Assembly: GCF_000143415.4 (NCBI RefSeq)
Contig: NW_003314271.1
Location: forward strand, 1,167,955-1,196,816
Length of the DNA: 28,862 nucleotides
Source of the DNA: Selaginella moellendorffii
Taxonomy: Eukaryota; Plantae; Lycopodiophyta
Direction of reading: 5' to 3'
Shown in pieces: positions 330-28,862 of the stretch; position 1 is the stretch's first letter; each line of letters begins with the position of its first letter. The notes beneath the pieces are model-generated. The model did no database searches, was not told the origin of the DNA, and worked only from the letters and a program-made list of their open reading frames with translations. A program made the position numbers and the translations under genes.

Positions 330-362
330 CTAAACCCTAAACCCTAAACCCTAACCCTAAAC
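330..362 (+). repeat. Interstitial plant telomere-like repeat (CCCTAAA)n with one CCCTAA variant
   Basis: Sequence reads ctaaaccctaaaccctaaaccctaaccctaaac, about 4.5 units. Confidence 0.9.
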
Positions 363-1345: not shown

Positions 1346-1655
1346 GTATGTTCACCATGGAATGGTTTAGGACCACATTTAGAAATGGCATGAGGCCACA
1401 TGCCATCTTGGGCCCTTGCAATTTCATGGCTAGCGTATTGTCATGTATGTTTTTACTTGCCTGCAACTGTGTGTATATCAAGATGGCATGAGGCCTCATG
1501 CCAATTTTGTGAATGCGAAATTTCATGTGGGTGTCAATAGCATGTTTGAATAATGGCATGTGGCCTCATGCTATTGAGGTTGTTTGGTATGTTATGATTT
1601 AGGCCATTCTCCAATCATTTTTTGTATGGTCTTAACTTCTTTTCTGCACTTTCAG
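1346..1655 (+). other. Predicted spliceosomal intron in the 5' UTR of the transposase gene
   Basis: Donor CTG|GTATGT at 1346; branch-like CTTAAC at 1631; pyrimidine tract and TTTCAG| ending at 1655, with the ATG at 1657. Confidence 0.6.
1385..1573. repeat. Three copies of the 20-bp palindrome TGGCATGAGGCCTCATGCCA in the intron
   Basis: Perfect copy at 1484-1503; 1-2 mismatch copies at 1386-1405 and 1554-1573. Related copies lie at ~700-718, ~769-795, ~3401-3420 and ~3458-3477. Confidence 0.85.
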
Positions 1656-1656
1656 A

Positions 1657-4136: not shown

Positions 4137-4236
4137 NNNNNNNNNNNNNNNNNNNNNNNNNNNNNNNNNNNNNNNNNNNNNNNNNNNNNNNNNNNNNNNN
4201 NNNNNNNNNNNNNNNNNNNNNNNNNNNNNNNNNNNN
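4137..4236. other. Assembly gap (100 N)
   Basis: Exactly 100 Ns, typical of a scaffold gap of unknown size, so the two flanks need not be physically adjacent. Confidence 0.98.
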
Positions 4237-4648
4237 ACTCGTCTGGACACAAAGTCACCGCGCTAGTCACCATGCCCCAGATATGTCTAGCCCCTGGACA
4301 AAAAACATATAATTTCACGTCATTTTCAAATACTTGAAAATTTGTACCTAGTCCCATTTTACTGAATAAATCCCACTTTAACGAAATAGAGCTTAGCAAC
4401 AAACAGCAGCAAAAATCTGTAAGTCCCAAGCTACCTTTGGATCAACGCCACCTGAGCAAATATCAACAGTTGAACTTGAGTTAACTTCATCACCAATATC
4501 CACCATTGATGTGCAATCAAGCCAAATCAAACCACATCAATTCCATCAACAAATCTCTACCGTTCATCACCAGCAATCGAGTGCCGCAAGATCAGCAAAC
4601 CAACAGGTTTCAAGAATCTTAACGGGGTGAGCACTTTGATCACAGAAA

Positions 4649-6982: not shown

Positions 6983-8790
6983 AGAAATGTTTCGTTGCCA
7001 CATTATCCATATAAACTTTGAAATGCCTCCCAAGGTAATGTTGCCACTCCTTGAGTGCCTTGACCACCACAAATAATTACTTCTCGTGGGTAGGCCACCT
7101 TTGTTGAGCCTTGTCCAACTTCTTCGTGAAGAATGCCACTAGATGGTTATCTTGCTTCAAAACTACACTCAACACAAAGTCTGGAGCGTTCGTTTCTACT
7201 TCAAAGTCCTTACTAAAGTCTGGTAGCACCAACATAGGAGTCTTCCTCAACTTCTCTTTGAGGTGGATAAATATCGCCTCACATTCCACTATCTATACCA
7301 TCTTTGCTTTTCCCATTTGGTCCATTAAAAGCAAAGTTATTCTCAAATAGTGTTTAATAAACTTTCGGTAGTAGTTGCATAACCCTAAGAATACCCTTAA
7401 TTCATGTATATTAGATGGTCGTTCCCATTCTTGGATCACTTGGATCTTCTCAGGGTCCACCTTGAGCCCATCCTTGCCCACCACATGCCCAAGAAACTTT
7501 ACCTCTTATTGAGCAAAGTCATATTTGCTCTCTTTAACATGCAGTTGGTGTTCCCTTAGTTTTTCAAACACCTTTGTCAAGTGTTTGGCATGCTCCTCTA
7601 GTGTCTCGCTATAGATCAGGATGTCATCAATATAGACGACTGCGAAGTGATCTAAATAGGGTATAAAAATGTGGTTCATCAACACTGAAAACATTGCCAG
7701 CGCATTACACAGCCCAAAGGGCATCACCAGAAACTCAAAGCTCCCATACTTTGCTCGATAGATTGTCTTCTTGACATCTTCCTCTGCTATCCTGATCTGG
7801 TAATATCCTGACCTTAGATCCATCCTCGAGAAGTATTTTGCCTTTCCTAACCTATTGAACAAGTCCTCAATCCTTGGCAAAAGGTACTTGTTCTTTTTTA
7901 TATACTTATTGAGCAATTGGTAGTCTATGAATATGTGTATAGATCCATTTTTCTTTTTCACAAATAACACTAGTGCCTCATATGGCGACTTGCTCAACCT
8001 AATATATCCTTTATCCAATAACTCTTCTAATTGGCATTTGAGCTCCTCGAGTACCTTTTTGTTCAAACGATAGGGGGGACAAACCACTGCCTTAACACCC
8101 TCGACCAGCTTAATTTTATATTTTATCAATCGTGTAGGGGGTAACCCCACAGGTAGCTCCTCCGACATAGTATCTTGGAATTGGTCCAACACCCGCTGGA
8201 TCACTAAATGTACTTCTTTCGTTTCCATTTTTTTGTCACTCCTCATTGAGAATAAGCACAAAAATGCTGCCTTGATTCTTTTAGTGAGTTGTCCTCTTGT
8301 GGATACCAAGTTTAAACAAGAGTCTTTGGCCTTACATTGCTCTACCTTTAGATCTTGGGCCTCCACCCTGGATTTTTCTCCCCGGACATTTGCCAATACC
8401 ACAAGGTTCTTGTTTTGTCCATCCAGGGCTATTACGAACCGATTGAACCAATCCATCCCAAAGATTACGTCAAATCCTGCCATGTCCAACACAGTGAAAT
8501 CTATATCTACTTTCTATGTCCCTACTTTGACTTTAGCTTGTCGAAGTATCTCATCAATGCTTTGGTTACTTTGAACAAACTCTATAGTCTTTTGTTCGCC
8601 TAGCTGTTGCACCATTAGTCTGGCTTGCCAGACTATATTTGCAACCACAAAATTATCCGAAGGACTCGTGTCAATAAGAATCTTAACAAAGCTACCTCTA
8701 AGCTTCCCTCGGAGTGCTAGTAGATGTTGCAAACGACTCTCTACCAAAGTTGCTTGTGTAATGAATAACTTTGAGCTAAGGACTAGATCA
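6983..8790 (-). pseudogene. pol: pol: aspartic protease, reverse transcriptase and RNase H, with stops and frameshifts; integrase not in view
   Basis: LIDTSPSDNFV and FDVIFGMDWF (PR); LPRIEDL, DLRSGYYQI, VMPFGLCNA and VYIDDILIYS (RT); FLGLCNYYRKFI; LPDFSKDFEVETNAPD and AQQRWPTHEK (RH). Confidence 0.93.
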
Positions 8791-10655
8791 ATTTGGATTT
8801 CACCCAATTTAATGGTCATATTGGCTTTGGCCTTCTTTGGGTAGGGACATTCCCTCAAAAAGTGTCCTGCTTTGCCACAGTTGAAGTATATGTTGTTTTT
8901 CATGCTACTAGCAAATTTGACATTTTTATCCGTGGTTTTATCCCTTTACGCTTGACTCCCCCATATACTTGCTTGCTGGCCACCGGATCTGCCTTTCCGG
9001 AACCTTAAGGACTCATTCTTAGAGAAACTCTTCTTGAATTTCCCTTTGCCATATGTCCTCTTTGGTTTGGCCCTTTTGCTAAATGTGGACCTTAACCCCG
9101 TTGTGTTACCCTTTTGCAAGTTATCATCAAAATGCACCTTGATAGCTGCATCCAATGCTTCCTTGTAGTTGGTCGAGTTCCAACGCATCACCTCACTTCA
9201 AGCCCAAGTCTGCAAGCTTGATATGAAGGCATGGAATGCATCTATACCGCATATGTCTGTGATAAGGATCCTCTTTGCCATGAATGCATTCACATACTCT
9301 TGAATAGTTTCTGCTTGCTTCATCCTGCTCTGCTCATCACTTAGGTGTAAAGTAGCATTCGGTGGAACATAGGTTGCACAGATCCTCACCTTCATCATTT
9401 CCCAAGTAGCAACCGGTCCTTCATTGGCCTTTGTTATTTTTCACCAAGACTTAGCATTATCTACTAAGTATGGTTTTGCACATGGGACTTTCTTCGAACT
9501 CGATAACCACAACATTCGGAAGTAATCTTCCATATTGTAAAACCAATCCTCCACCACCTTATAGTCGTTCACTCCCTTGAAAACTAGTGGGGGGTTTGGT
9601 TTATACTTGGGAACTGCTTCGGGGACTGATTCCACTTTGGTTTGTTTGAATTTATTTAGTTCTGCCTCGGTCCCACTAAAGGGACCACGCCTTCTGCACT
9701 GCCAACCTCTGCAGTCTTTGGATTTTTCTTTCGCTTTTTGTCACACTTTAGCTTACATACGAGGGTCTCTAACAAGGCATTGGTCTATGTCAATTGTCCT
9801 TCTAGAATGTCCAATTAAGCCTTAGACGACCGAACCTCTCCACTAGACTTCTATTTGGAAGATTCCTCACTGGAGTCCTCCTCGTGCAAGGATTCTTCAT
9901 CCATATGTTTTTGTTCGACCAGAGGCTCCAGATCCGGAGGAAGTTCCGTCTGTAGCGCACCCTATTTCTGTCCCCTTAAGCCAACTGGAAAAGGGGCAAT
10001 TGCTTGATGAGAAAGCCCTTAGTGGCTATTTTATCCCTATTTATCCCCCAAGGTTCTAAGGATCCACGGTGATAGTATATCCAAATTTCATCCTATGATC
10101 ACATGCGCTATACTCACCCCCCTTTCAGAGATGTCAATGTCCTCATTGACTATTGACTAATAACCCCGACTGAGTCAAGGGGAACCAACACCTCCATTTC
10201 CGCACTCAATCTACCAATTGTGTAGACTAGCTATTCCATGTGAGACAACTAATCATCCACCTATACCGCAGTCCTATGGTGGATACTTTTGTCTGTAGAT
10301 ACTCCACACAAGAGGAAGGACGTACGCATGGATACCCAATGCGTATGATTTCAAATTTAAGGGTAGGAATATATCTTGCTCAAGGGTATATTATATTTGA
10401 AGTAACCACTAATCAATGGGAATCGAACCCATGCCATTTGCTCTGATACCAACTGTAGTGCACCTTTTCTCTCTCCCTTTAAGCCAACTGGAAAATGGGC
10501 AATTGCTTGATGAAAGAGCCCTTAGTGGCAATTTTATCTCTATTTATCCCCCAAGGTTTTAAGGATCCACGGTGATAATATATTCAAATCTCATCCCATG
10601 ATCACATGCACTACACCATCTCTGCTTTGATTCTTTTACGCCTTGCCTTTGCCAT
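8791..10655 (-). pseudogene. gag: gag with zinc knuckle, split by the TRIM at 9951-10615
   Basis: ATG at 10655 reads MAKARRKRIKAEM and rejoins ELPPDLEPLVEQ in frame once the TRIM and one TSD copy are removed. Also PPLVFKG..VEDWFYNMEDYF, QAETIQEYVNAF and the degenerate CCHC YFNCGKAGHFLREC. Confidence 0.85.
9951..10615 (-). mobile_element. TRIM (terminal-repeat retrotransposon in miniature), 665 bp, complete
   Basis: 162-bp LTRs at 9951-10112 and 10454-10615; PBS TGGTATCAGAGC (10440-10451, minus strand); PPT GAAAGGGGGTGAG adjacent to 10113; 5-bp TSD CCGTC/CCATC; no ORF. Confidence 0.93.
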
Positions 10656-10698
10656 CTCCCAACAATTCACCTCTATCCTTTTCTAGAACTAAGGAAAA

Positions 10699-10711
10699 GG
10701 CTCCAATACTA
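10699..10711 (-). promoter_or_regulatory. Degenerate tRNA-iMet primer binding site
   Basis: TAGTATTGGAGCC on the minus strand, 3 nt after the LTR end CTTACA; compare TGGTATCGGAGC at 24832. Confidence 0.7.
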
Positions 10712-10714
10712 AAT

Positions 10715-11823
10715 TGTAAGCCATAAAATTTTAGCTTTCAATTTGCCAGTTTACCTCATCTATCTGACCAACACTACTTTGGCCTTAGTTAAGTTCCTTT
10801 ACCAAGGTTCCTGCCTATTACACCAACTCTTACTTAGTCCTACTTAGTTTCAGCTACTCACTGCACGAGCAATGAAGCGTTAACCAACCATCCATAGATT
10901 CCCAAATCTCTCCCAATCCCCCTCTAGACTTATGGTTCAATTACACTCCCCGCAGGCACAAGTAGCCAAGCCTCCAGGTTTTTAACATCCCTTGATACAA
11001 CAAGACTTGATCATAAGACCCTCTAAATCCCAAGCCTTGGGTGTAACATTCACTCTGGGGCACCAGGGGGAAACACTATGGCCTACCGGCCCAGTATGGG
11101 TACCTCTAGTCCCCCACTTCCATCCCGAAGGGAAGGCCCAAGCCCCTAGGAAGGGGCAAAGACCAATGAGCCATAAGGTACTCAAGTGGGGCACCACTCC
11201 ACATAAGCCGGGAGCACCGTAGTCGGTTTACCTTTCGAGAGTGGGAGTTGCTTTTGAGCACTTCCTTGGGTGGCCCCTCTGGCACCACCCGAGTCTATGC
11301 TCACTCCCACCCAAGGCCTCTAAGCACCAGTCTCAACCTCAAGTCAGTTTGGAAGCACCACTGGAGAGTTCCTTCAAGACTAGTTCCTAAACCTCACTAT
11401 TCCTATCATACTTTTGGAACTCCCTGCAGCCCCCCCACCCCCTTGGGAGACACGCTTTGGGCTTTCACCCCACGATCTGTATTAGTATTCGGACTCGATC
11501 TTGGACTCGATCTCAGACTCGAGCTCGAACCCAACCTCAGACTCGGTCTCGAACTCGATCTCAGACTCAACCTCAGACCCGATCTCAGACTTGACCTCGG
11601 ACTCGACCTCAGACTCAGTCTCAAACCCAATCTCGAATCTCAGACTTGGTCTCAAACTCGATCTTGAACTCGGTCTCGAACTCGGTCTCGGAGTCAGTCT
11701 CAGACTCGATCCCGGACTTTGTCTCGAACTCAGTCTCAGAGTTAGTCTTGGAGTCGATCTTAGACTCGGTCCCATCCGATGAACTCTTTATCATTTCGGT
11801 CGTGCTTTTGGGGATAGCCTACA
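10715..11823 (-). repeat. 5' LTR (~1.1 kb) of the minus-strand gypsy element
   Basis: TGTAAG...CTTACA termini; homologous to 16589-17314; contains a hexamer array and the GGGTGAAAGCCCAAAG / TCCAAAAGTATGATAGG core. Confidence 0.85.
11489..11776 (-). repeat. Degenerate hexamer array (GAGTCC/GAGACC/GAGATC type) in LTR U3
   Basis: 6/12-bp periodicity visible as ...gactcg atctca gactcg... on the plus strand. Confidence 0.85.
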
Positions 11824-15814: not shown

Positions 15815-16588
15815 ATTAGTACTTCAAAACTTTTTTTCCTTCTCCAAAAGGATAAAAAGAATGTGGAGAACAAACAAAGTGAGTCTAACTTCCCATATGT
15901 GGTGTTTGATGAGGACAAAAGTTAAAAGTCTAAGTTAATATAGGTTTTAAAGGTTTACCAAAATGAAAATATAGAAGTAGATTTTGCTAATGGTCGTGAG
16001 TTTGAGTTTATAGTGGTCTCAGAGAATGGTTGGTAGGCAAACTTAAAGATAGAATGTATCATTTACCATAATGATGTTTTATGGACTATAATAACTTTTG
16101 AAGTCCCTTTGACATGAACCACAAGAATATTTTTAAAATATTCTATGGCTTGTGGGATTTAAGGCTGTTAACACCTTAAGGGTTGAGAGGTTAGTCTAGG
16201 GTTCACTCTTTGTTTGTTTCATTGGTATCGAAGTAACATGTTCTTTTAAGGATGGTGGAGGAGTGAGATATAGATTCTAATAAGGAGTATAGTGTTAGTG
16301 ATGATGGCTATGATGAGGAGGATGAATCTCTTAATGATGTTGTCGTGGTAAGGTCTCCAGATTTGTAAGGTTCAAAGTGACATTAAAGAAGTTAAGGATT
16401 CTATCAATCTCATTAAAGATTTCCTTCTTCGCATGAACCCTCAAGGGTTGAATCAATCTCATGTCTGTGATTACTATTAATATGTTAAACATGTTAAGAA
16501 TTATGGTATCATGGAATGGAAGTCATCACCAAATGTTTGTGGTAACCAAGAAGTTGATTTTTGGTTGGAATCGTGGAAAAGTTGTTGG

Positions 16589-17314
16589 TCTGTAGGGGGT
16601 TCCAAAAGTATAGTAGGGATAGTGAGGTCCAGGAACCAGTCTTGAAGGAACTCTCTAGTGGTGCTTCCAAACTGACTTGAGGTTGAGACTGGGGCCGAGG
16701 GGCCTTGGGTGGGAGTGAGCATGGACTCGGGTGGTGCCAAAGGGGCCACCCAAGGAAGTGCTCAAAAGCAGCTCCCACTCCCAAAAGGGAAATCGACTGC
16801 GGTGCTCCCAGCTCATGTGGAGTGGTGCCCCACCTGAGTACCTTGTGGCTCATTGGTCCTCGCCCTTCCTAGGGGCTTAGACCTTCCCTTCGGGATGGAA
16901 GTGGGGGGGTAGAGGTACCCATACTGGGCCGCTAGGCCACGCTGTTTCACCCCGATGTCCCGAAACGAGTGTTGCACCCAAGGCTTGGGATTTAGAGGGT
17001 CCCATGATCAAGTCTTGTGGTACCAACGGATGTTAGGAACCTGGAGGCTTGGTGTGTTTAGCTGCTTGTGCCTGCGGTGAGTGTAGCCGAACCTTAAGTC
17101 CAGTCTAACTTGGGGAGGGGGATTGGAAGAGATGTGGGAATCCGTGGATGGATGGCTAATGCTCTGTTACTCGTGTAGTGAGTAGCTAAAACCAAGTAGG
17201 AGCTGGTACAATAGGCTGGAACCTTGGCAAGGGGACTTAGCAAAAGCCAAGGTAGTGTTGGTCGGATAGACAAGGTAAGTTGGCAAATTGGAAAGGAAAA
17301 ATTTATAGCTTACA
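16589..17314 (+). repeat. 5'-truncated solo LTR of the same family as 10715-11823
   Basis: Reverse-complement homology to ~10715-11430; ends GCTTACA; no PBS follows; the U3 hexamer array is missing. Confidence 0.85.
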
Positions 17315-17901
17315 GTTTTGTGATCTTTGCCTTAGTCTCACAAGCACTTATAATAAGCTACTAAAGGTGCAATATTTCATTAAAGGTTTGAGCTCAGGGA
17401 ATGTGTAGCAAAAGGTCAAGAAGGATTTTCCCACAATGTTGATTGATGCTATCACAAAGGCTCAGATCTTTTCCCCTAAACTGTCAATCAACTTCGTCAA
17501 ATTTGGTCAATAGGATGGTCTACATGGTAGTTAACATGATGACCAACCCACCAATGCTTCATATTCAAGGAAGAAACAACTGTTGTTCCATTGTGGCTCA
17601 AAGAGTGGAGATGGTCACGAGGCCAAAAAAAATTATTTGGACCAACATGAGAAGGATAAGGTGGAGGGTAATTGTTTTCTTTGTTATAAGGCTAGACATC
17701 ATAGCAAAGATTGTCCTCTTGGGAAGGGATCAAAGAATGCTAAGGTGAATGTGATGGAATTTATTATGGATATAGCTCAAATATCTGTTGTGGTGACTCT
17801 TCCACACCCTGTGGCAAAAATTCAAGAATCTAAATCTCAAGTTCATATCAACTTTGTAAAGTTTAATGGTTCTATACTTGATTAACTTGTGAAGGTATAT
17901 G

Positions 17902-18499
17902 TGTAATGCATGTGATCATAGGATGAAATTTGGATATACTGTCACTATGGATCCTTGAAACCTTAGGGGATAAATAAGGATAAATTAGCCATTAAAGGCT
18001 CTCTCATCAAGCAATTGCCCTGGAGAGAGATAATGTGTGTTATATGTGGTATTAGAGCAAATGGCATTAGTTCAATTCTCATTGATTAATGGCTACTTAA
18101 AATATAATATACTTTTGAGTAAAGTATATTCCTACCTCTAAAAATTGAAATACATATTAGGCATCCATGAGTATGAAATAGTTGATCTACACAATGGAAA
18201 GATTGGTAAAAATACGAAAATCAATGTGCTAATTCCCCTCGTCTTAGTAAGGGTTGTTATACTAGTTCCCCATGGCTTAGTAAAGGTTGTTAGTCAATAG
18301 TTAATGAGGACATTGACATTTTTTAAAGGGGAGTGAGTGTAATGCATGTGATTATAGAATGAAATTTGAATATGCTGTCACCATAAATCCTTGAAACCTT
18401 GGAAAATAAATAGAGATGAAATAATCAATAAAGACTCTCTTATCAAGCAATTGCTTCTTTTCCAATTGGTTTAAGGGGAGAAAAATAGAATATACTATA
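17902..18499 (+). mobile_element. Second, older copy of the TRIM family
   Basis: LTRs at 17902-18044 (with ~19-bp deletion) and 18338-18499 (162 bp); PBS TGGTATTAGAGC at 18047-18058; PPT AAAGGGGAGTGAG; many C>T and G>A changes; no clean TSD. Confidence 0.88.
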
Positions 18500-19110
18500 C
18501 CAAGGGGGACATTTAGGATCATGTGATTAGTATTCTTTTCAATCTAGAAGCTACACACAATTTTTTGAGCTCTAAGGTGGTGAAAAAACTTAGTTTGCTT
18601 ATGGAAAAGAATTTAGTAATCTATGAGGTGGTTATCACAAATGGATGTAACACTTGTGTTTATGGTGAATAGACTATAAGTGTTCCTTTGACGATTCAGG
18701 GGATTCTTGACCATCTTTCATTTTAGGTTATGGATCTTGGTTGTACAGATGTTATTCTTGGGAAGGAATGGTTTTATGAAAGAAAGTTAAGGATTGATTG
18801 GGAGCATAATGTTTTACATATCAAAGCTAGTGGCACTGTGAAAGGGATTGTTAGGATAGATAACAATGATACTCTATTGATTAATACTTTGGAGTTAGTG
18901 ATTTGCACATATGAAATAGCTAATTATTTCGTGGTGTACCTGTTTCTTTCTAATATAATCATGTCTAATTTGGAGTATATTTATGGGCATAGGGCTTAGG
19001 TGCTTCCATTCATGAGAAGTTCTGTGAGGTATTTCCGGATGAATTGCCTAATGGTTTGCCTCCCGCCATGGAATTCAACATGAGATTGACTTAGTTCTTG
19101 GAGTTACTCT

Positions 19111-19480: not shown

Positions 19481-22400
19481 TGTGAGACACAAAATCCCTA
19501 GGCCCCAAAGTGGAGCTGAAAGGGTGCCACGTGGTAGTGGCCGAAGCAAAAGCCAAACAAGCGTAACACGTTTGGACTAAAAGCTCCGACTTGAAAAGGT
19601 CGAGAGTGGGAGTGGAACTCCCAATGAAGTGCTCGAGGAACAAGCATGAAGTGAAAGATAAGTGAGTATCTAGAAAAAGGATACAAGAGGACCGACACAT
19701 GAAATGTGGAAGAGTCCGAGATGGAGTCCGAGATGGACCGAGATGGAGTCCAAGGTCGAGACCGAGCCCGAGACCGGGATGGAGACGGGCTCGGTCTAGG
19801 GTTTGGGAGACGAACGCTTTGGGCTTTCACCCTCGGTCTCGGTCTCGGTCTCGGTCTAGGGGGTTTGGTGAGCTCCAAAAGTATAGTGAGGGGGAAGACT
19901 GCAGTGGAGCCAGTTTGGCCAAGAAAGGCCAGTTTGGCCCAGAAAGGCTGTACCCAGTGTTGGGTGATGAGCTGCCCACTGGGAAGTCCAAGACTAGAGT
20001 GAACACAGACCGACAGGGTAGCTTGGTGAAGTGTTCAAGAGCCGGCTTTAGTTCCCCTGGGAGATCGATGCTCCCAATCCAAGTGTGGGTGGCACTACCT
20101 ACTTGGATACTTAGTGTGGCTCAATGGAACCTCGCTCTAAGCCCATGGCTAGAGCACCCAAAGGCAGAAGGCAAGGAGAGTACCCACGAGGCTTGCATAG
20201 GGCCACGGTGTTCTGAAATGTTGCCCCAAAGTCCCAGATTGTGGAAAGGAAGAAGAGTAGCCCTCTGGTGTGGTGACAAAGGACACAGTCACACAGTGAG
20301 GAAGTCCCAAAGGACAGTTGGACTTAGTGGTCGGGCCTGTAGGCCTTGATCCAGTGGCAGTGTTGGTGAACACCGCCATGGACAGGAAGGGACTTGGTGG
20401 GGACTGGAAAGGAGACATTGGGGAAGGCTATTCCCCATGTCTGCAGGCATCCTAAGGATGCTATAGAGTGGATCTGGGATAGCCACTCATGGATGGATGG
20501 CCTAGTCTTTGAGAAACGGGATTGAAATGCAGGTGGTGTTGGACCACCGATGTGACCAAGGTGAATGGGCATGGCCTAGCATAACGGGCTGGTATGTTGG
20601 TGGTACCTTGGGGTGTCGGTCATAGAATCGGACATGTGGAGCACTTGGACCAAGTGCAAAGGTTGAGTGGCATAGATGCCATTCTCGGGGTTAGCAAGCC
20701 CCAAGTTCTGAATGGGACTTATGGAGGTTGTGAATGAGACTCCTCCAAGTGGTCGGAGGTGCAATTAAATGACTACAGTAGAATAGAAAATTTAGCCACT
20801 TACAACTTAGTATCGGAGCTGTTCCTTAGTCTGACTCTTATTGGTGGCCAAGTATATCACCACTTGTATTGGAATAGAAAGGTCCTAGGTATGGACCTAT
20901 CCTCGAGGAGTAGCATGGTGAGAGGATATGGCTCCCCACTCAAGTTCATGTATGAACTTGTGCGCAATGTGGTGGATGGAAAATGGCCAAAGGGAATGAC
21001 TTTGGGATCTTGGGAATAGTATAAAGGTTTCCTCAGAGAGTTGAGGATGTGATCCAGATGAGCGTTTGACGCAGCAAACGGGCTAATGTAGTTGTGGTAA
21101 ACAACTATAGTTGGGATCACGGGGAAGATGCAGACTCCAAAAACAATAAAGGAGTCACAAGATTACCCTCATATAGTGAAGGCTGGTGCTCATAAATTTG
21201 AGACCGGAATTGATGACTGAGGGAGGTCAAATACGAAAGAGGACACAAGTCCTTGAAATGGTAGCCAGGACTACCTCTAATAAATGCGGGAACAACCCAA
21301 GGAGTTAGGGGTGTACTTAGAGGATGAGTTGGTATTCTCATCATATGGACAGGTGGTCCTAAGGGGCAAAAGGTTGCTCCCAGAGAATAAAATCAAGTGT
21401 TGGAATAACACTGATAATGGTGGTCCTGGTGAGTAGGACATGAATACAAAAAGTTGTATTCCAGTGAGCCGGCACCTCAAAAGTAAAACTTTATAAGTCG
21501 GGGGATTAGGAAAATTCCAAAAGGCTGAATGACTTAAGTGGACTCAAGAAATAGTCCTAAAGGACTGATGGAAGCATTCTGACTGAGGTGTGTTGTGCCC
21601 CATGAAGGATGGGGAGGATCATAAGATCCAAGTATGAGAACAGTGGGTATCTCATGGGTGGCAAAATGTGCCATACTAAAGTCGTGGGAAAGGTGTTCCC
21701 AGAAGAAGTAACTTTGGTGCAGAGTTGTGTGCGAACACTATGGTGTAGTGCTAACGGATAGTTGGCATGAGAAACGACTAGGTTGGTCTTGGCAAAGACC
21801 TAGACACAAGTGCAAAGTGTCATAAAGGCAAACTCATGGAGCTGATGGTATGGAGACACCAAATGGGCTAAGGTGTGATACCTTCAGGTTATGTTGATGG
21901 GTTCATGAGAACCCCTTGCCAAGGGAATCCCAATAGAAATGGGAATGGCATAGCCTAAGCTGGAAGGCATGTGGTAGAGTGTGGTTACCTGGATAATGAT
22001 GGAGGTGTGGAAGCACCAGCAATGAGTTGTAGGACTTGACAATAAGGCAACTAAGCAGGAGGTGCAAGTAATTGGTTAAACGGGTAGAAGGTAGCTACCC
22101 AAGACTTCTTAAAGTTAAATATACCCTTATCGAGGATAAGTTGTTTATGTTGCGATATAGTAAGTCAATGTTGTAAAAGGAAATGCTCATTGTCAAGGAG
22201 GCCATCATTGGGACACCCAAACACTCTAGAACACCAAAAGGTGGTGTTTAATGTCGCAAGGGCAATAGATAAGGCCCAAGGGACAAAGTCTCTGGCGAAC
22301 GATGGATAAAAGGTGCTATCCAAATATCCAAGGTTGTGGAGACGGGAGAAGTCCGTCTACCCAAATTGGACAAAGCCAAAGAGGGATTTTGGCAAAGCTA

Positions 22401-23117
22401 GTGATGGGCATATAAAGGCCCATAAGTGGCAACGGTAATCCCAGTGTGTAGGATTACAAGGTGAGTATACCCAAATTGAGGAACCACTCCCTAAGCTGTC
22501 GGGTAGGTTCATACCAAGGCATGGTAGAAAGTGCAAAGCTATCTTCTTAGTTTGGAGGAGAATGACAAAAGGAAATGTATGAGGCCAAAAGGCAAGTAGT
22601 AAAGGGATAAAACTGAACCATAAGAATTGACAAGCATGACCAAGAATGGCAAAGAAAAGAGCCATGGGAATCATGGGATAGAAGCCAAATGGCAAAGTTA
22701 GTCCAAGAACACTAATGTGTTGGACGCTAACAGATTATGCGAAGGCAATGTGTTTCCAAGGATAAATTCCCAATTGCTCCGATTTGGCGAAGGTGGAAGC
22801 TCCAAGGGATGGAGTGGTAAAGTAGCCAAATGGTAGGGCCATGGACAACCCTAGCACGAATTACAATAACTGGAACTTAGTGCCAAGGGTGGCACGATAT
22901 CGAAGAGAGGATGATGGTGCCCTTAAATAAAGAACTTCCTAGGACGGGAAGTGGAGTTGCACTATGTGCAACGTAAGGTGTCGAAGACACCTAGGAAATT
23001 GACTCTGAGAAGTCAAAATTAAAAGTTCCAAAGTGCAAAAGTTATGTTGATGGAATCTGAGACTACTCGAGAATGAGTAGTGGAATTGAGTTAGAGAAGG
23101 GGTCTCTAACGGGTTTA
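19481..23117 (+). mobile_element. LARD-like LTR element with no recognisable coding sequence, copy A (5' LTR 19481-20804, PBS, internal region), interrupted by copy B
   Basis: TGTGAG...CTTACA LTR; PBS TAGTATCGGAGC at 20808-20819; internal region collinear with 24844-28660 but lacking ~26700-28180; no gag/pol motifs seen. Confidence 0.85.
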
Positions 23118-23347
23118 TGTGAGACACAAAATCCCTAGGCCCCAAAGTGGAGCCGGAAGGGCGCCACGTGGTAGTGGCCGAAGCGAGAGCCAAATGAGCG
23201 TAACACGTTTGGACCAAAAGCTCCGACTTGAAAAGTCAAGAGCGGGAGTGGAACTCCCAAAGAAGTGCTCGAGGAATGAGCACGAAGCGAGCCATAGGCA
23301 AGGCTCCAAAAAGGGACCCAAAACGGACCAATATATGACACGTGGAA

Positions 23348-23840
23348 GAGTCCGAGATGGAGTTTGAGATGGACTCCGAGATGGACCCGAGATGGAGTCC
23401 GAGATGGAGTCCGAGATGGAGTCCAAGATGGAGTCCGAGGTGGAGTCCGAGACGGAGTCCAAGGTGGACCCGAGATGGACCCGAGATGGAGTCCGAGATG
23501 GAGTCCGAGATGGACCCGAGATGGAGTCCGAGATGGACCCGAGATGGGCACGAGATGGAGTCCGAGATGGAGTCCGAGATGGACCCGAGATGGGCACAAG
23601 ATGGAGTCCGAGATGGAGTCCGAGATGGACCCGAGATGGAGTCCGAAGTCGAGACCGAGACCAAGACCGAGACCGGGGCCGAGACCGAGACCGAGATCGG
23701 GACCGAGACCGAGACCGAGGCCGAGGCCGAGACCGAGCCCGAGCCCGAGTCCGAGTCCGAGTCTGAGTCCGAGTCCAAGTCCGAGTCCGAGTCTGAGTCC
23801 GAGTCCAAGTCCGAGTCCGAGTCCGAGTTCGAGTCTGAGA
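23348..23840 (+). repeat. Compound hexamer array in U3: (GAGATG-GAGTCC/GACCC)n, then (GAGACC)n, then (GAGTCC)n
   Basis: Directly visible, ~490 bp; it produces stop-free frames on both strands. Confidence 0.95.
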
Positions 23841-23906
23841 GGGTGAAAGCCCAAAGCATTCGTCTCCCAGACCCTGGGGGGTGAGCTCCAAAAGTATAGT
23901 AGGGGG
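23841..23906 (+). promoter_or_regulatory. Putative LTR core promoter (GGGTGAAAGCCCAAAG, G-run, TCCAAAAGTATAGTAGGG)
   Basis: The same motif order recurs in otherwise dissimilar LTRs at ~11400-11471 (minus) and 13660-13738, and in part at 16595-16620, 19157-19175 and 19815-19895. Confidence 0.55.
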
Positions 23907-24831
23907 AGGACTGCAGTGGAGCCAGTTTGGCCAGGAAAGGCCAGTTTGGCCCAGGAAGGTCAGACCCAGTGTTGGGTGATGAGCTGCCCACTGGGAAGTC
24001 CAAGACTAGAGTGAACACGGACCGACAAGCGGGGTAGCTTGGTGAAGTGTTCAAGAGCCGGCTCTAGTTCCCCCGGGAGATCGACTGGCCGATGCTCCCA
24101 GTCCAAGTGTGGGTGGCACTACCTACTTGGATACCTGTCGTGGCTCAACGGAACCTCGCTCTAAGCCCATGGCTAGAGCACCTAAAGGCGAAAGGCGGGA
24201 GAGTACCCATGAGGCTCGCGTAAGGCTACGGTGTTCCGAAATGTTGTCCCAAAGGCCCAGACTGTGGAAAGGAAGAGGAGCAGTCCTCTGGGGCAGTGAC
24301 CAAGGATGCAGTCGTGTGGTGAGGAAGTCCCAGAGGACCTTGGGACTTAGTGGTCGGGCCTGTGGGCCTCGATCCAGTGGCGGTGTTGGCAAACACGGCC
24401 AAGGGCAGAAAGGGACTTAGTGGGGACCGGAACAGAGATATCGGGGAAGGCTATTCCCCACGTCTGTAGGCATCCTAAGGATGTTAAGGAGTGGATCTGG
24501 GATGATCACTCATGGACGGATGACCCAGTCTTTGAGAGACGGGATTGGAATGCAGGTGGTGTTGGACCACCAGTGTGACCAAGGTAAATGGGCATGGCCT
24601 TAGCGTAACGGGCCGATACGTCGGTGGTACCTTGGGGTGTCGATCATGGGATCGGACACGTGGAGCACTTAGACCAAGTGCTAAGGTTGGGTGGCATGGA
24701 TGCTATTCTCAGGGCTAGCAAGCCCCAAGTCCTGAGTTGGACTTATGGAGGTTGTGAATGAGACTCCTCTAAGTGGTTGGAGGTGTGGTTAAGTGACTAA
24801 AGTAGAATGGAAAAATTTGTCGCTTACAACT

Positions 24832-24843
24832 TGGTATCGGAGC
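24832..24843 (+). promoter_or_regulatory. tRNA-iMet primer binding site
   Basis: TGGTATCGGAGC, 3 nt after the LTR end; complementary to the iMet tRNA 3' end GCUCUGAUACCA with one G-U pair. Confidence 0.88.
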
Positions 24844-27258
24844 TATTCCTTAGTCCGACTTTTATTGGTGCTCAAGTATATCACCACTAGTGTTGGCATC
24901 GGAAGGTCCGAGGAGTGGGCCTATCTTTGAGGAGTAGCAAGTCAGGAAGACATGACTCTCCATTACAGTTCATGTGTGAACTTGTAGACGAGGTGGTGGA
25001 TAGAAAAGGGCCAATAATGGAACGACTTTGGGATCTTGGGAACAGTGCAAGGTTTTCCTCATTGAGTTGAGGATGTGATCCGGATGAGCATTTGTCTCAG
25101 CAAATTGGCTAAGGTAGTTGTGGTAAACAACTATAGTTGGGATCACGGGAAAGATAGAGACTCCAAAACAATAAAGGAGTCACAAGATTATCCTCGTATA
25201 GTTGAGGTTGGTGCTCATGAATGTGAGACCAGAGGTAATGACCGTGGGAGGTCAAATACGGAAGAGGACTCAAGTCCTTGAAATGGTAGCCGGGGCTACC
25301 TTTAATAAATGCTGGAACAACCTGAGGAGTTCGGGGGTGTACTTAGAGATGAGTTGGTATTCTCATCACATGGACAAGTAGTCCTAAGGGGCAAAGGTTG
25401 CCCATAGAGAACAAAATCAAGTGTCAGAGTAACACTTGTGAAAATAGTCCTTTTGAGTAGGACAGGAATGCAAGAAGTGTATTCCAGTGAGCTAGTGCCT
25501 CACAAGTAGGACCTTACGGGTCTATGGATTAACCAAGTCCAAAATTGCTGGATGACTCAAGTAGAGTCAAGGGATGGTCCTAAAAGGACTGATGGAAGCA
25601 TTTGGATTGAGGTGTGTTATACCCCACAAAGGATGGGGGGGGATCATAGGATCCAAGGATGAGAACAAAGGGTATCTCATCGATGGCAAAATGTGCCATG
25701 CTAAAGTCGTGGGAAAGGTGTTCCCAAAAAGAAAACAACTTTGACACAAAGTTGTGTGTGACCTCTATGATGCAGTGCTAACAGATGGTTGGCATGAGAA
25801 AGAGTGGTATTGGTCTTGGCAAAGACTTAGACACAAAGAAGAAGTGTCATAGAGGTAGGCTCGTGGAGCCGATGGTGTGGGGACACCGAAGGTGCCAAGG
25901 TATGATACCTTGAGGCTATGTTGGTGGGTTCATGAGAACCCCTTGCCAAAGGAATCCCAATAGAAATGAGAATGGCATAGCCTAAGCTGCAGAGCATGCA
26001 GTTGGAGTGTGGTGACCCAGATAATGATGGAGGTGTGGAAGCACCAGCAATGAGTTGTAGGACTTGACAACTACGAGGCAACTAAGCAAGAGGTGCAAAA
26101 TAATTGGTTAAACGGGTAGAAGGTAGCTACCCAAGCCTTCTTAATGGCATAGGGAAGTTGGATATACCCTTACGGGGGATAAGTTGCTTACAGTTGCAAT
26201 ATAGTAAGTCAATGTCGTAAACGGGAATGCTCATTATCAGGAGGCCATCATTAAGACACCCAAACACTCTAGAACACCAGAAGGTGGTGTTTCATGTCAC
26301 AAGGGCAATAGATAAGGCCCAAAGGACTAAGTCCCTAGCGAATGAGGGATAGTAGGTGCTATCCAAATGTCCGAGGTTGTGGAGACAAGAGAAGACTGTC
26401 TACCCGAATTGGACAAAGCCAAAAATGGAATTTTGGCAAGGCTAGTGGTGGGCATGTAAAGGCCCATAAACAACAACGTTAATCCCGATATGTGGGATTA
26501 TAAGGTGAGCATGCCCAAGATTGAGGAACCACTCCATATGCTATCGGGTAGGTTCATCCCTAAGAATACTTGCTAAGGCATAGTAAAATGTGCAAAGCTA
26601 TCCTCCTAGTCTGGAGGAGAATAACCAAAGGAAACATAGGGGGCCAAAAGGCAAGTAGTATTGGGATGGAACTGAACCATAGAAATCAAAGGGCATATCC
26701 CACAGTGGTTATGCAAGTTGGGAGTGGAGAATCAAGAGGGTGCTTGAGGATGTTGTTGCTAGCAACCGTGATGCCATGGAGAGTCTAAAATATGGAATTG
26801 TCCATGTTAGACTATATGGCAACTATAAAGCTTGCGAAAAGGGAGGCCTTAGCAAGCTGAGGGACAGAGTTCCTTCAAGGTTCCCAAAGATGATTCTAGG
26901 TAGCTTAGTACCTAGAAAGGCCAAGTGTAAATGGTTCATGGAACGCGCGAAATTAGAGTGGCGCAGCAGAAGCGTGGTCTTGAAGCTTGCCATGAGGCAA
27001 GGCTATCAAGGTTAGGGAAGTAGTTCCCGAGTGTTCAAAGAGATAGCTTTGAATGAAAGTCAATGGTCAAGGACTTTCACGCTTATGCAGGAACCATGTT
27101 ACAGTGGTCGGAGGACTTGCCAAGCGAGATTGGCACGTCGGGGGAACAAATACCCTAATTGAAGGTGATAACTTCAAAAAGGGTGGGCCATGGGGCCGAG
27201 CATGGAGGAGTCCATGCATGATCACAGACATGTCAAGTGAGAGGACTTGGCAGTGCGG

Positions 27259-27834
27259 AGGAACTAGGTTCCTAAGCTGTGATCTGTAGCGCGCTTTAAA
27301 TATAGGTTGGTGCACCGGCGTGGGGAGTCACGCCAGGCATCTTGTGTGATGCCGTCCGTAGATGCATATACGGAGGTTGGGTTCGAGTCCCGACCCTCTA
27401 GTGCTTGGGTTCGAGTCCCAAATCACTAGGGCGTGGTGATGGTTTGGAATATGAGGACACTCATATTTCGGTGGTCATGGACTCTCAGTGGGGAGACTGG
27501 TTTGGGCACACCGCCAAGCGAGGGATGCCTCGGAGTCGTGATGCACGGTTAGATTGCTTAGTGTGAAAGTTTGGCATATCTAACTTGAACGCTTTGGTGC
27601 AAGTGGCACCAAGGACGTGGTGAGTGAGATGGGGACACCTAATCTCAGTTGCTATGGACCCTTGGCCGGAAGGGCTGGCTTGGGCGCACCGCCAAGTGTG
27701 GGGGATGCCCCCGGGGTCGTAGTTAACAAGTTAAAGGTCTGGAAAACCTAGTACCTATTGGCAAACCTGTTAAGGTGCCGAGGTGAGATCACTAGGTGAT
27801 CTTGTGGCTAAATAAGGACAAGGTCCTTGTTTGG
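27259..27834 (+). ncRNA. Candidate highly structured cis-acting RNA domain within the LARD-like element
   Basis: More than 15 adjacent stem-loops readable by eye, two GGGTTCGAGTCCC T-arm mimics and a duplicated four-way junction with compensatory substitutions. Confidence 0.55.
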
Positions 27835-28750
27835 GTTAAGGAATAAGGTTCCTAGTTCAAAGTGTTGATTTGAACTATTGATGATGGTGTAACTTGGTCA
27901 AGGTCACCAAGTGGGAAAAGCACCTTAGGGAAATGAGCTATGTCATTGCGATGGCATAGTGTGTCCAAGGAAAGTAGTCTCTAAAGAGACCCATGGGAGG
28001 GTCACAAAGTTGGGCCGTGGATAGAGCCCATAGCAGAAGGTGCTAAAAGAGACTTACTACGGGTGAACACCCTAGTCTTGGCAAAGCCGAGCCTTTGCTA
28101 TGGAATCAAAAGAATACCTCAAGGAGGGAGGTAGAGATTCGATGTTGCTTAGTGCAACAATCAACGGATAGGAGCAAAAGATGAGTGGCCAAGATAGGGC
28201 CGTGGAATCCCTTGGAAGGAATCCAAGTGACAAAGTTAGGCGAGGAACACTAATATGTTGGACGCTAACAAATTGTGGGAAAGGAAGTGTGTTTCCAAGG
28301 ATGGATTCCGAATTGCTCCAATTTGGCGAAAGTGGAAGCTCCAAGGGAGGGAGCGGTAAGGTAGCCAAACGATAGGGCCATGGACAGCCCTAGCACAAAG
28401 TATGATAAATGGAACTTAGTGCCCAAGGTGGCCCGAAATAGAAGAGAGGATGATGGTGCCCTCAAGTAATGAACTTCCTAGGATGGGGAAGTGGAGTTGC
28501 ACAATCTGTGCAATGCAAGGTGTTGGAGACACCTAGGAAATTGACTTCCAAAAGTCAAAAGAGTAAAAGTTCCAAGGTGCAAACGTTCAATAGATGGAAA
28601 TTGAGACTACTCGAGAAGGAGTAGTGGGATTGACTTAGAGAAGGGTCTCTAAGAGGTTTAGCGAGAACTAAACCAATAAAAGGAGAGAACCACTACATGT
28701 GGTCCAATCAGTCTCTAAGTTGGAGAGACTACCCTCCTTAGAGGATAGGC

Positions 28751-28862
28751 AAGGCATGGTGAGCCTTTGGTGTCAAACCATTGAGGAATATGCAAAAGGC
28801 ATGGTGAGCATTCAATGTCAAACCATTGACAAATATGGAGAAGGCATGGTGAGCCTTCAATG
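28751..28862 (+). repeat. 45-bp tandem repeat (at least 2.5 copies), running off the window
   Basis: AAGGCATGGTGAGC starts at 28751, 28796 and 28841. Confidence 0.9.

What the first reader, a model, noticed from the sequence alone, without database searches (positions are those of the whole stretch)
27431..27725. Duplicated cloverleaf-like four-way junction with compensatory base changes between the two copies
Seen: two ~180-nt units (from CGTGGTGA at ~27432 and ~27616) differ in sequence but keep the same fold. Leader hairpin with a GACA loop: AATATGAG/CTCATATT versus TGAGATGGG/CCTAATCTCA. Closing stem: TCATG.ACTC/GAGT.CGTGA versus CTATG.ACCC/GGGT.CGTAG. Arm 1 has a purine loop: CAGT-GGGGAG-ACTG versus TGGCC-GGAAG-GGCTG. 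Arm 2 is TTGG-GCRCACCG-CCAA in both. Arm 3 has a GATG loop: CGAGG/CCTCG versus GGGG/CCCC. Loops are conserved while stems covary, the usual signature of selection on RNA structure. I do not recognise a hammerhead, HDV or twister core. Inference: a possibly undescribed RNA motif acting in packaging, export, protein binding or processing.
Basis: partly seen in the sequence, partly recalled or inferred. Interest (0 to 1): 0.85.

Follow-up and report, generated by a model that had tools for sequence, protein, structure and literature searches.

The report
Duplicated RNA fold in plant retroelement
Two diverged neighbouring copies of a ~100-base sequence, inside a non-coding, hairpin-packed relic of a plant LTR retrotransposon, keep the same hairpin-plus-four-way-junction fold through compensatory base changes; this points to an uncatalogued RNA element of the retroelement, but only two copies exist here and no relatives were found, so its role is inferred.

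Summary
CGTGGTGA starts two units at 27432 and 27616. The homologous modules (27445-27543 and 27625-27724, about 72% identical) fit one model: a leader hairpin plus a closing stem with three arms. Of 36 modelled pairs, 7 changed on both sides and 7 on one side. None is broken in the model-fitted alignment, and at most 2 in sequence-only alignments. Neutral simulation expects about 9 broken pairs (P of none = 3.5e-5). Stems diverged more than loops (32% v 18.5%). The fold is specific to the + strand. Rfam 15 and ARAGORN find nothing.

Caveats:
- There are only two copies.
- Unit 2's energy optimum uses a competing leader pairing and merges arms 2 and 3.
- The sister copy of the surrounding repeat lacks the whole segment.
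- No relatives were found in any collection reachable here.

Context: the modules lie about 3.6 kb into a non-coding, LTR-like sequence. It follows a purine tract and LTR-start words shared with other LTRs in the window. It carries about four times the hairpins expected by chance.

Best reading: a cis-acting RNA structure on the retroelement's + strand transcript, kept by selection, probably a protein-binding site such as a packaging or transport signal. The structure is shown; the function is inferred. This is a new member of a known kind, of moderate interest.

The parts
27432..27439 (+). Word CGTGGTGA at the head of unit 1. It can pair with the 5' strand of the outer closing stem and so form a competing conformer.
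   Evidence: Sequence; fold of 27431-27545.
27445..27470 (+). Unit 1 leader hairpin: 11-bp stem with a GACA loop.
27474..27542 (+). Unit 1 four-way junction. Outer closing stem 27474-27479 with 27537-27542. Inner closing stem 27481-27485 with 27532-27536. Arm 1 is 27486-27499 (purine loop), arm 2 is 27500-27519 and arm 3 is 27520-27531 (GATG loop).
   Evidence: This is the minimum-energy fold of unit 1, with closing-stem pair probabilities of 0.47-0.99.
27544..27615 (+). Spacer between the modules. It folds into two further hairpins and has no clear counterpart after unit 2.
27616..27623 (+). Word CGTGGTGA at the head of unit 2. In the energy optimum of unit 2 it pairs with 27650-27657.
27625..27647 (+). 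Unit 2 leader hairpin with a GACA loop. It has 2 compensatory and 3 one-sided changes relative to unit 1.
27651..27723 (+). Unit 2 four-way junction. Outer closing stem 27651-27656 with 27718-27723. Inner closing stem 27658-27662 with 27713-27717. Arm 1 is 27663-27677, arm 2 is 27678-27697 and arm 3 is 27698-27712.
   Evidence: Model-fitted alignment A7 and pair counts. The inner stem has probability about 1.0, arms 1-2 about 0.4 and arm 3 as drawn 0.03.
27317..27429 (+). Five hairpins directly upstream. One has a GGAG tetraloop. Two are tandem 28-nt units whose hairpins carry a 7-nt TTCGAGT loop and resemble a tRNA T arm.
   Evidence: Fold, z -3.95; tandem repeat 27377-27436; word search.
26705..28190 (+). 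Segment of about 1.5 kb (approximate bounds) present in repeat copy 2 only. It holds the whole finding. Its two breakpoints share a short word.
23118..28671 (+). Copy 2 of the large non-coding direct repeat. It comprises a 230-nt head, a 12-nt array, a purine tract, LTR-start-like words and a hairpin-dense body.
19481..23117 (+). Copy 1 of the same repeat, about 84-86% identical to copy 2. It lacks the 1.5-kb segment.
23843..23905 (+). Junction signature: GGTGAAAGCCCAAAG, then a G-rich purine tract, then words shared with the starts of the 1.5-1.9 kb LTR-like repeats at 11432 (-), 13700 (+) and 16587 (+).
   Evidence: Alignment of five sites.

Best explanation
The two modules are paralogous copies of a cis-acting structured RNA element. 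The element is carried on the + strand transcript of a non-coding (LARD-like, non-autonomous or decayed) Ty3/gypsy-type LTR retroelement.

An old local duplication produced two modules. Each has a leader hairpin and a four-way junction. The lineage kept both while it was still replicating. Stems therefore drifted by transitions through G-U intermediates and were restored, while loops stayed fixed.

The most likely role is as a protein-binding platform. The exposed conserved loops are GACA, a purine loop, an 8-nt loop and GATG, and a GGAG tetraloop hairpin lies just upstream. They would be read by a Gag or nucleocapsid zinc-knuckle protein supplied in trans (a packaging signal), or by a host transport factor. 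Duplication would double the number of sites.

Shown: the shared fold, the covariation, the strand specificity, the non-coding retroelement context and the absence from Rfam. Inferred: transcription of the region, past selection, and the protein-binding, packaging or transport role.
For: Covariation:
- 14 of 14 changed pairs still pair in the model-fitted alignment. In sequence-only alignments 12-13 of 14 do.
- Neutral expectation is 9.3 broken pairs, P(0 broken) = 3.5e-5.
- Three compensatory changes lie in the long-range closing stem, which local hairpin-copying mutation cannot easily explain.
- Three G-U pairs are invariant, and stems are more diverged than loops.

Strand and specificity:
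- The + strand is 43 kcal/mol more stable than the - strand.
- RNAalifold recovers the model.
- The model detects unit 2 at E about 1e-10 and nothing else.

Background:
- Hairpins compared between the two younger big-repeat copies behave neutrally: 45 kept against 41 broken for single changes, and 7 against 7 for double changes. The module pair therefore stands out.

Context:
- A purine tract and LTR-start words precede the region.
- Short tandem arrays lie upstream, as described between pol and the 3' LTR of Retand/Tat elements (PMC11963269).
- No Pfam domain is found in any open frame tested.
- A gypsy Gag with a CCHC knuckle is encoded in the same window.
Against: - There are only two sequences, so no family-level statistics are possible.
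- Unit 2's predicted optimum is a different fold for the leader and for arms 2-3.
- The sister copy of the repeat lacks the segment, so the module is dispensable for that copy, or that copy is a deletion derivative.
- The whole 9 kb is hairpin-dense, so a hairpin-rich background raises the chance of look-alike folds.
- Transcription, element boundaries (no PBS or second LTR end identified) and any protein partner are untested.
- No relatives were retrieved.
Confidence: 0.5

Rival explanations
1. There is no function. A tandem duplication arose inside a sequence that generates or tolerates many local inverted repeats. The shared fold would be inherited from the duplicated template, and the apparent compensation would come from chance or from a mutational process that copies one hairpin arm onto the other (template switching).
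For: - The LTR-like region has about 4 times the hairpins of shuffled sequence on both strands and low folding z-scores throughout.
- Hairpins are not preserved between repeat copies 1 and 2.
- Only two units exist.
- The module is absent from copy 1.
Against: - Neutral simulation gives P = 3.5e-5 for no broken pair.
- Compensatory swaps occur in a closing stem whose strands lie about 60 nt apart.
- Changes run in both directions (U-A to C-G and C-G to U-A).
- G-U pairs make the fold specific to the + strand, which DNA palindromes would not be.
- Loops are more conserved than stems.
Confidence: 0.25
2. The module is a tRNA- or SINE-derived unit captured in an LTR, like Helenus/TRIMp3 or the 5S-bearing Cassandra elements. 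It would serve as an RNA polymerase III promoter or as a tRNA mimic.
For: - The topology is cloverleaf-like.
- Two hairpins just upstream (27375-27429) have a 7-nt T-loop-like loop and carry GGTTCGAGTCC, which contains the GGTTC that Helenus LTRs conserve in box B (PMC10886601).
- Small-RNA-derived sequences in LTRs are documented (PMC10886601, PMC7215508).
Against: - ARAGORN finds no tRNA in the window.
- No tRNA, 5S or other Rfam hit appears even at E <= 10 on 471 nt.
- The junction has no linker nucleotides, and its loop sizes (6, 8 and 4 nt) are unlike those of a tRNA.
- The T-loop-like hairpins lie outside the duplicated modules.
- The 11-mer with one mismatch is only weakly enriched: 4 found against 1.3 expected.
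Confidence: 0.07
3. The units are a DNA-level regulatory repeat: a duplicated enhancer or promoter block in the U3 part of an LTR, read by transcription factors rather than folded as RNA.
For: - Tandem duplications in LTR regulatory regions are common (general knowledge of LTR retroelements).
- One of only four TAAATA words in 19481-28862 lies at 27297, just upstream.
- Conserved 'loop' words could be factor-binding sites.
Against: - A DNA-binding model does not predict paired compensatory changes or strand-specific G-U pairing.
- No canonical TATA[AT]A[AT] is present in the region.
Confidence: 0.08
4. The module is a processing element: a self-cleaving ribozyme or a small-RNA precursor.
For: - The fold is compact and multi-branched with conserved loops.
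- Retrozymes show that plant non-autonomous LTR elements can carry ribozymes in their LTRs (PMC4918200).
Against: - No hammerhead, HDV, twister, hatchet, pistol or other ribozyme family matches in Rfam 15.
- Stems are at most 11 bp, too short for Dicer-type precursors.
Confidence: 0.05

Closest known systems
Conserved RNA secondary structures of non-autonomous plant LTR retrotransposons (LARD and TRIM groups; PMC7215508 and the work it cites)
   Same: Both involve a non-coding retroelement, long LTR-like sequence, structure rather than coding capacity being conserved, presumed dependence on proteins supplied in trans, and an alternating 'internal piece - LTR - internal piece - LTR' arrangement.
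   Different: No sequence relationship could be tested, because no LARD or TRIM sequence was available to the tools. Here the evidence is a specific duplicated ~100-nt module with pair-by-pair covariation, and the element's ends (PBS, second LTR end) are not resolved.
Small-RNA-like sequences in LTRs: Cassandra (5S rRNA-like), Helenus (tRNA-like) and Ajax (PMC10886601, PMC7215508)
   Same: A compact, folded, RNA-gene-like module sits inside an LTR. Here a T-arm-like hairpin pair with a GGTTC word lies next to the modules.
   Different: The modules match no tRNA or 5S model. Those elements are miniature (LTRs of about 100-300 bp), whereas this LTR-like sequence exceeds 4.8 kb.
Cis-acting structured RNA signals of retroviruses and LTR retrotransposons: packaging signals built from stem-loops with exposed purine-rich loops bound by nucleocapsid zinc knuckles, and RNA transport elements of simple retroviruses and murine retrotransposons, which contain internally repeated motifs (my own knowledge, not tested here)
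   Same: Multi-hairpin domains, conserved loops on covarying stems, frequent internal duplication, and location in untranslated or LTR-derived RNA. This is a likeness in how the element would work.
   Different: There is no sequence or model match to any such family in Rfam 15. No binding, packaging or export data exist, and the position relative to the transcript ends is unknown.
Retrozymes (plant non-autonomous LTR elements with hammerhead ribozymes in the LTRs; PMC4918200)
   Same: A structured RNA motif lies in the LTR of a non-coding plant retroelement.
   Different: No hammerhead or other self-cleaving core was detected.
Retand/Tat-type Ty3/gypsy elements with tandem arrays between pol and the 3' LTR (PMC11963269)
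   Same: 12-nt tandem arrays lie directly upstream of the purine tract.
   Different: Reported Retand LTRs are 315-1,194 bp. Here the sequence after the purine tract stays non-coding for more than 4.8 kb. The lineage of the element was not determined.

Membership tests
Any Rfam 15 family (including hammerhead, HDV, twister, tRNA, 5S, SRP, snRNAs and viral tRNA-like structures) | Covariance-model match at the gathering score | tested here: not met
   There are 0 matches in the whole window at gathering scores. At E <= 10 there are only three noise hits of 16 bits or less in 26600-28300 and 0 hits in 27290-27760.
tRNA or tRNA-derived module (Helenus/TRIMp3, tRNA-SINE head) | Recognisable tRNA cloverleaf with an anticodon arm | tested here: not met
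   ARAGORN finds 0 genes and no Rfam tRNA hit appears at E <= 10.
tRNA or tRNA-derived module (Helenus/TRIMp3, tRNA-SINE head) | Pol III boxes A and B (TRGCY..YGG and GGTTC as given in PMC10886601) | tested here: inconclusive
   GGTTCGAGTCC occurs twice at 27380 and 27408, upstream of the modules and inside a 28-nt tandem repeat. No box A was looked for systematically, and neither word lies inside the duplicated modules.
Cassandra/Ajax (5S-bearing TRIM) | 5S rRNA-like sequence in the LTR | tested here: not met
   No 5S hit in Rfam searches.
Retrozyme | Hammerhead ribozyme in each LTR | tested here: not met
   No hammerhead family hit.
LTR retrotransposon, non-autonomous (LARD-like) | Purine tract followed by an LTR start | tested here: met
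   A G-rich tract and conserved start words are shared by five sites, including 19857 and 23868.
LTR retrotransposon, non-autonomous (LARD-like) | Two LTRs with defined ends, a PBS after the 5' LTR, and target-site duplication | tested here: inconclusive
   Copies 1 and 2 share sequence from 19481/23118 to 23117/28671. However, no LTR-end words, PBS or duplication were identified, and copy 2 may run on beyond the window.
LTR retrotransposon, non-autonomous (LARD-like) | No gag/pol coding capacity | tested here: met
   No ORF of 120 aa or more lies outside the arrays. No Pfam hit was found in seven open frames of 19857-28862.
Retroelement packaging or transport signal | Binding by Gag/nucleocapsid or an export factor, and presence in the genomic RNA | not testable with these tools
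   The fit is by architecture only: purine-rich and conserved loops, and duplication.

The most novel reading that the evidence does not exclude
The modules are the visible tip of a new class of retroelement RNA. This would be a multi-kilobase, LTR-borne, hairpin-saturated transcript, about one stem-loop every 55 nt. Its conserved four-way-junction modules would be the recognition sites through which a protein-less element captures the Gag of an autonomous partner. That would make it a structurally defined signal for being packaged in trans, with no counterpart in Rfam.
Probability: 0.15. Interest if true: 0.7.

Novelty: new member of a known kind. Interest (0 to 1): 0.42.

Why it matters
Plant genomes are mostly LTR retroelements, and many are non-coding passengers that must be recognised by the proteins of others. 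The RNA signals that mediate this are almost unknown in plants, and none is catalogued in Rfam. A module with pair-by-pair covariation gives a concrete, searchable candidate: a covariance model can now be run over the source genome. The module also draws attention to a 9-kb sequence with a fourfold excess of hairpins. If the module proves conserved across the family, it would offer a marker for autonomous/non-autonomous partnerships and a defined object for RNA structure work. If it does not, the finding reduces to a local duplication in a hairpin-rich repeat.

Tried and rejected
Searches for relatives all failed:
- A 17-nt arm-2 pattern in viral contigs gave 7 hits, none extending beyond 24 nt.
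- A gapped arm-2/arm-3 pattern in metagenome contigs gave 1 chance hit with no flanking similarity.
- A 22-nt pattern in genome contigs gave 0 hits.
- Exact look-ups of 20 ORFs from the window found none in the collection.
- A word-indexed protein search with the 81-aa open frame over the modules found nothing.
- A full HMMER scan of representatives with the same frame gave 5 weak hits. These are multi-stretch matches to long proteins, which I read as low complexity.
- The gypsy RT ORF finds only 45-60% identical proteins, so same-species contigs could not be pulled through it.
- A full-text search for four words of the window and for the run accession gave 0 papers.

Ideas rejected:
- A third degenerate module at 27310-27405: 6.5 bits only.
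- The sequence after 28671 restarting the 'internal' head: local alignment no better than shuffles.
- The 1.5-kb extra segment being an inserted transposon: no terminal repeats or duplication, and its breakpoints share only a short word.
- My reading of 18727-18996 as a protease remnant: no Pfam hit.
- Bacterial-type promoter and terminator scans were not used, because they do not apply to plant nuclear DNA.

Slip, stated as required:
- The pattern is the window's own 11 letters with one N.

On models and consensus sequences:
- I built two covariance models of the ~100-nt non-coding module with the tool provided.

Full report
**1. What is there**

The window reads as plant nuclear DNA made of nested repeats. 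It has CCCTAAA-type repeats at 330-362 and Ty3/gypsy gag, protease and RT on the minus strand. It also has a spliced DUF7869 transposase-like gene.

The word CGTGGTGA occurs at 27432 and at 27616. From each copy runs a stretch that aligns with the other at about 72-73% identity. The homology covers about 100-115 nt per unit, not the full 184-nt period. The 70-nt spacer after unit 1 has no clear counterpart after unit 2.

**2. Is the shared fold real?**

- an 11-bp leader hairpin with a GACA loop;
- a bipartite closing stem;
- three arms with a purine loop, an 8-nt loop and a GATG loop.
- Closing-stem pair probabilities are 0.47-0.99.

I built a covariance model from unit 1 only, with that structure. 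It finds unit 2 at 58.7 bits (E about 1e-10). Nothing else in either strand of the window scores above 13 bits. A model of both units also finds no third copy.

On the model-fitted alignment of 36 pairs:
- 20 pairs are identical, 7 differ on one side and still pair, and 7 differ on both sides and still pair;
- none is broken and 2 are gapped;
- with partners slid by 1-3 columns, double changes fall to 0-1 and pairing to about 40%.

A model-fitted alignment leans towards its own structure. I therefore repeated the count on five sequence-only MAFFT alignments. They give 6 double changes kept and 1 broken, and 6-7 single changes kept and 0-1 broken.

I also simulated neutral divergence of unit 1 at the observed stem rate (32%) and transition share (85%). 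It breaks 9.3 pairs on average. No pair is broken in 3.5e-5 of runs, and at most two in 0.2%.

Further points in favour:
- Paired sites are more diverged (32%) than unpaired ones (18.5%).
- Three G-U pairs are invariant.
- RNAalifold returns the same topology: -42.6 kcal/mol, with a covariation term of -5.
- The fold belongs to the + strand, at -125.5 against -82.9 kcal/mol for 27432-27725.

**3. Caveats on the fold**

- In isolation, unit 2 prefers to pair its CGUGGUGA word with the 5' strand of the outer closing stem (-54.4 against -48.6 kcal/mol). It also merges arms 2 and 3.
Arms 1-2 have probabilities of about 0.4 and arm 3 as drawn has 0.03.
- The competing pairing has no covariation support, because its partner word is invariant. 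The outer closing stem has two compensatory swaps.
- The junction is therefore the better evolutionary model, but an alternative conformer is possible.
- Two sequences cannot give family-level statistics.

**4. Surroundings**

The stretches 19481-23117 and 23118-28671 are two direct copies of one non-coding unit, about 84-86% identical. Each copy has the same layout:
- a 230-nt head starting with TGTGAGACAC;
- a 12-nt tandem array (GAGTCCGAGATG type);
- the word GGTGAAAGCCCAAAG (inverted in copy 1);
- a G-rich purine tract;
- about 30 nt shared with the starts of three other LTR-like repeats of the window, at 11432 (-), 13700 (+) and 16587 (+).

Tandem arrays just upstream of the 3' LTR are a described trait of Retand/Tat-type gypsy elements (PMC11963269). 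I therefore read the sequence after 19857 and 23868 as LTR-like.

It is non-coding. There are no long ORFs outside the arrays, and seven of its open frames have no Pfam domain.

Its far end is not resolved. No LTR-end words and no primer-binding site were identified, and the sequence after 28671 does not restart the head.

Alternating internal pieces and LTRs are known for non-autonomous elements (PMC7215508). A plain tandem duplication explains the layout equally well.

The finding lies about 3.6 kb into copy 2, inside a segment of about 1.5 kb (about 26705-28190) that copy 1 lacks. The two breakpoints share a short word and there are no insertion hallmarks. Whether this is a deletion in copy 1 or a gain in copy 2 cannot be told.

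**5. A wider property of the region**

The LTR-like bodies carry 17-18 simple hairpins (stem of 6 bp or more) per kb on the + strand:
- 91 in copy 2, against 22.7 in shuffles;
- 56 in copy 1, against 15 in shuffles.

The rest of the window is at or near the shuffled level. Sliding folding z-scores are about -2 to -5 along the whole 9 kb, so the modules are not thermodynamic outliers there.

Between copies 1 and 2 the hairpins decay as expected for neutral change. Single changes are 45 kept against 41 broken, and double changes are 7 against 7. That fits two dead genomic copies.

The module pair is much older (about 28% diverged) and has no broken pairs. This is what one expects if the duplication evolved while the lineage still replicated. 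The unit 1/unit 2 pair is the only internal paralogy detectable in copy 2, so it is the only place where this test can be made.

**6. What it is not**

- No Rfam 15 family matches at gathering scores or at E <= 10 with lax filters.
- ARAGORN finds no tRNA.
- Directly upstream, at 27375-27429, two tandem hairpins have a 7-nt TTCGAGT loop. They carry GGTTCGAGTCC, which contains the GGTTC conserved in box B of tRNA-bearing Helenus LTRs (PMC10886601).
- That is a lead towards a tRNA-derived piece. However, these hairpins lie outside the duplicated modules, and the word is only weakly enriched.

**7. Mechanism**

The best-supported reading is a cis-acting RNA structure on the + strand transcript of a protein-less retroelement, kept by selection on pairing and on loop sequence.

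The role is inferred from architecture and from general knowledge of retroelements. Clusters of stem-loops with exposed purine-rich loops are what nucleocapsid zinc knuckles recognise in packaging signals. Transport elements of simple retroviruses and murine retrotransposons are internally repeated multi-hairpin domains.

A gypsy Gag with a CCHC knuckle is encoded in this window. The non-coding repeat shares its purine tract and LTR-start words with other LTRs here. That is the pattern expected of an element that borrows another's proteins.

None of this was tested. The rivals are a neutral hairpin-rich duplication, a tRNA-derived pol III module, a DNA-level enhancer repeat, and a ribozyme or small-RNA precursor. 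They are weighed in their own sections.

**8. Relatives**

None was obtained:
- Pattern scans gave only chance hits or nothing: viral, metagenome and prokaryotic genome collections.
- Exact look-ups of 20 ORFs found none in the collection.
- Two protein searches with the open frame over the modules found no relatives.
- The RT has only 45-60% identical hits, so the source species is poorly represented.
- One Logan contig from run ERR10900155 is 97.6-98.4% identical to the DUF7869 gene of the window in three exon-like blocks. Transcript data from the same or a close species therefore exist, but could not be searched by DNA here.

**9. Verdict**

- The interpretation as a conserved, uncatalogued RNA structure is supported as far as two copies allow.
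- The function is inferred.
- Novelty: a new member of a known kind, namely structured cis elements of LTR retroelements.
- Interest is moderate (0.42).

**10. Conduct**

- I recalled a few short consensus words from memory in my reasoning (listed under Tried and rejected).
- The gypsy gag and PR-RT frames were only scanned as they stand.
- The functional test of the module in the element's replication is referred.

Noticed in passing
window 19857-23117 and 23868-28862: The non-coding LTR-like bodies carry about 4 times as many simple hairpins (stem of 6 bp or more) as shuffled sequence: 56 against 15, and 91 against 22.7. The + strand has more than the - strand. Other parts of the window are at or near the shuffled level. 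This is roughly one stem-loop per 55 nt over 9 kb, and it is unexplained.
   Followed up: partly
window 27375-27429: A 28-nt tandem repeat (2.1 copies) forms two hairpins with a 7-nt TTCGAGT loop on 5-7 bp stems. They resemble a tRNA T arm and contain a box-B-like GGTTC word. No tRNA is detected by ARAGORN or Rfam.
   Followed up: partly
window 28751-28862: A 45-nt tandem repeat (2.5 copies, cut by the window end) has units that each form two small hairpins. By eye, one copy differs from the next by changes that keep pairing through G-U wobble on the + strand.
   Followed up: no
window 11489-11771 (-), 19712-19784 (+), 23348-23840 (+): Arrays of a 12-nt unit (GAGTCCGAGATG type, up to 42 copies) lie just upstream of G-rich purine tracts. 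This resembles the arrays described between pol and the 3' LTR of Retand/Tat elements (PMC11963269).
   Followed up: partly
window 19798-19833 v 23840-23875: The GGTGAAAGCCCAAAG block before the purine tract is inverted in copy 1 relative to copy 2: 94% identity on the opposite strand.
   Followed up: no
window 9950-11432 (-) and 16587-18497 (+): Two LTR-like repeats of 1.5-1.9 kb start with TG and end with CTACA or CTATA. They are 80-90% alike and lie head to head, 5.1 kb apart. One has an internal 503-nt duplication.
   Followed up: partly
window 7506-8903 (-): Ty3/gypsy gag (CCHC knuckle) and protease-RT lie in one reading frame interrupted by a single stop. No RNase H or integrase domain was found in the one downstream frame tested. 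The best database relatives are only 45-60% identical.
   Followed up: partly
window 1483-4403 (+); L009: A DUF7869 transposase-like gene matches a Logan transcript contig (run ERR10900155) at 97.6-98.4% identity in three blocks separated by intron-like gaps. The family is therefore expressed in the same or a close species. Named distant relatives are from liverworts, at about 30% identity.
   Followed up: partly
window 27297 and 28675: A TAAATA word (in TTTAAATATAGG) lies about 135 nt upstream of unit 1, and an AATAAA word lies just after the end of repeat copy 2. No canonical TATA[AT]A[AT] is present anywhere in 19481-28862. Whether these mark transcript ends is unknown.
   Followed up: no
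window 330-362: A short plant-telomere-type repeat (CTAAACC, 4.9 copies) lies at an interstitial site.
   Followed up: no
window 27310-27317: An 8-nt palindrome, GGTGCACC, lies in the hairpin cluster upstream of unit 1. Palindromic words of this kind can mediate RNA-RNA contacts. This was not tested.
   Followed up: no
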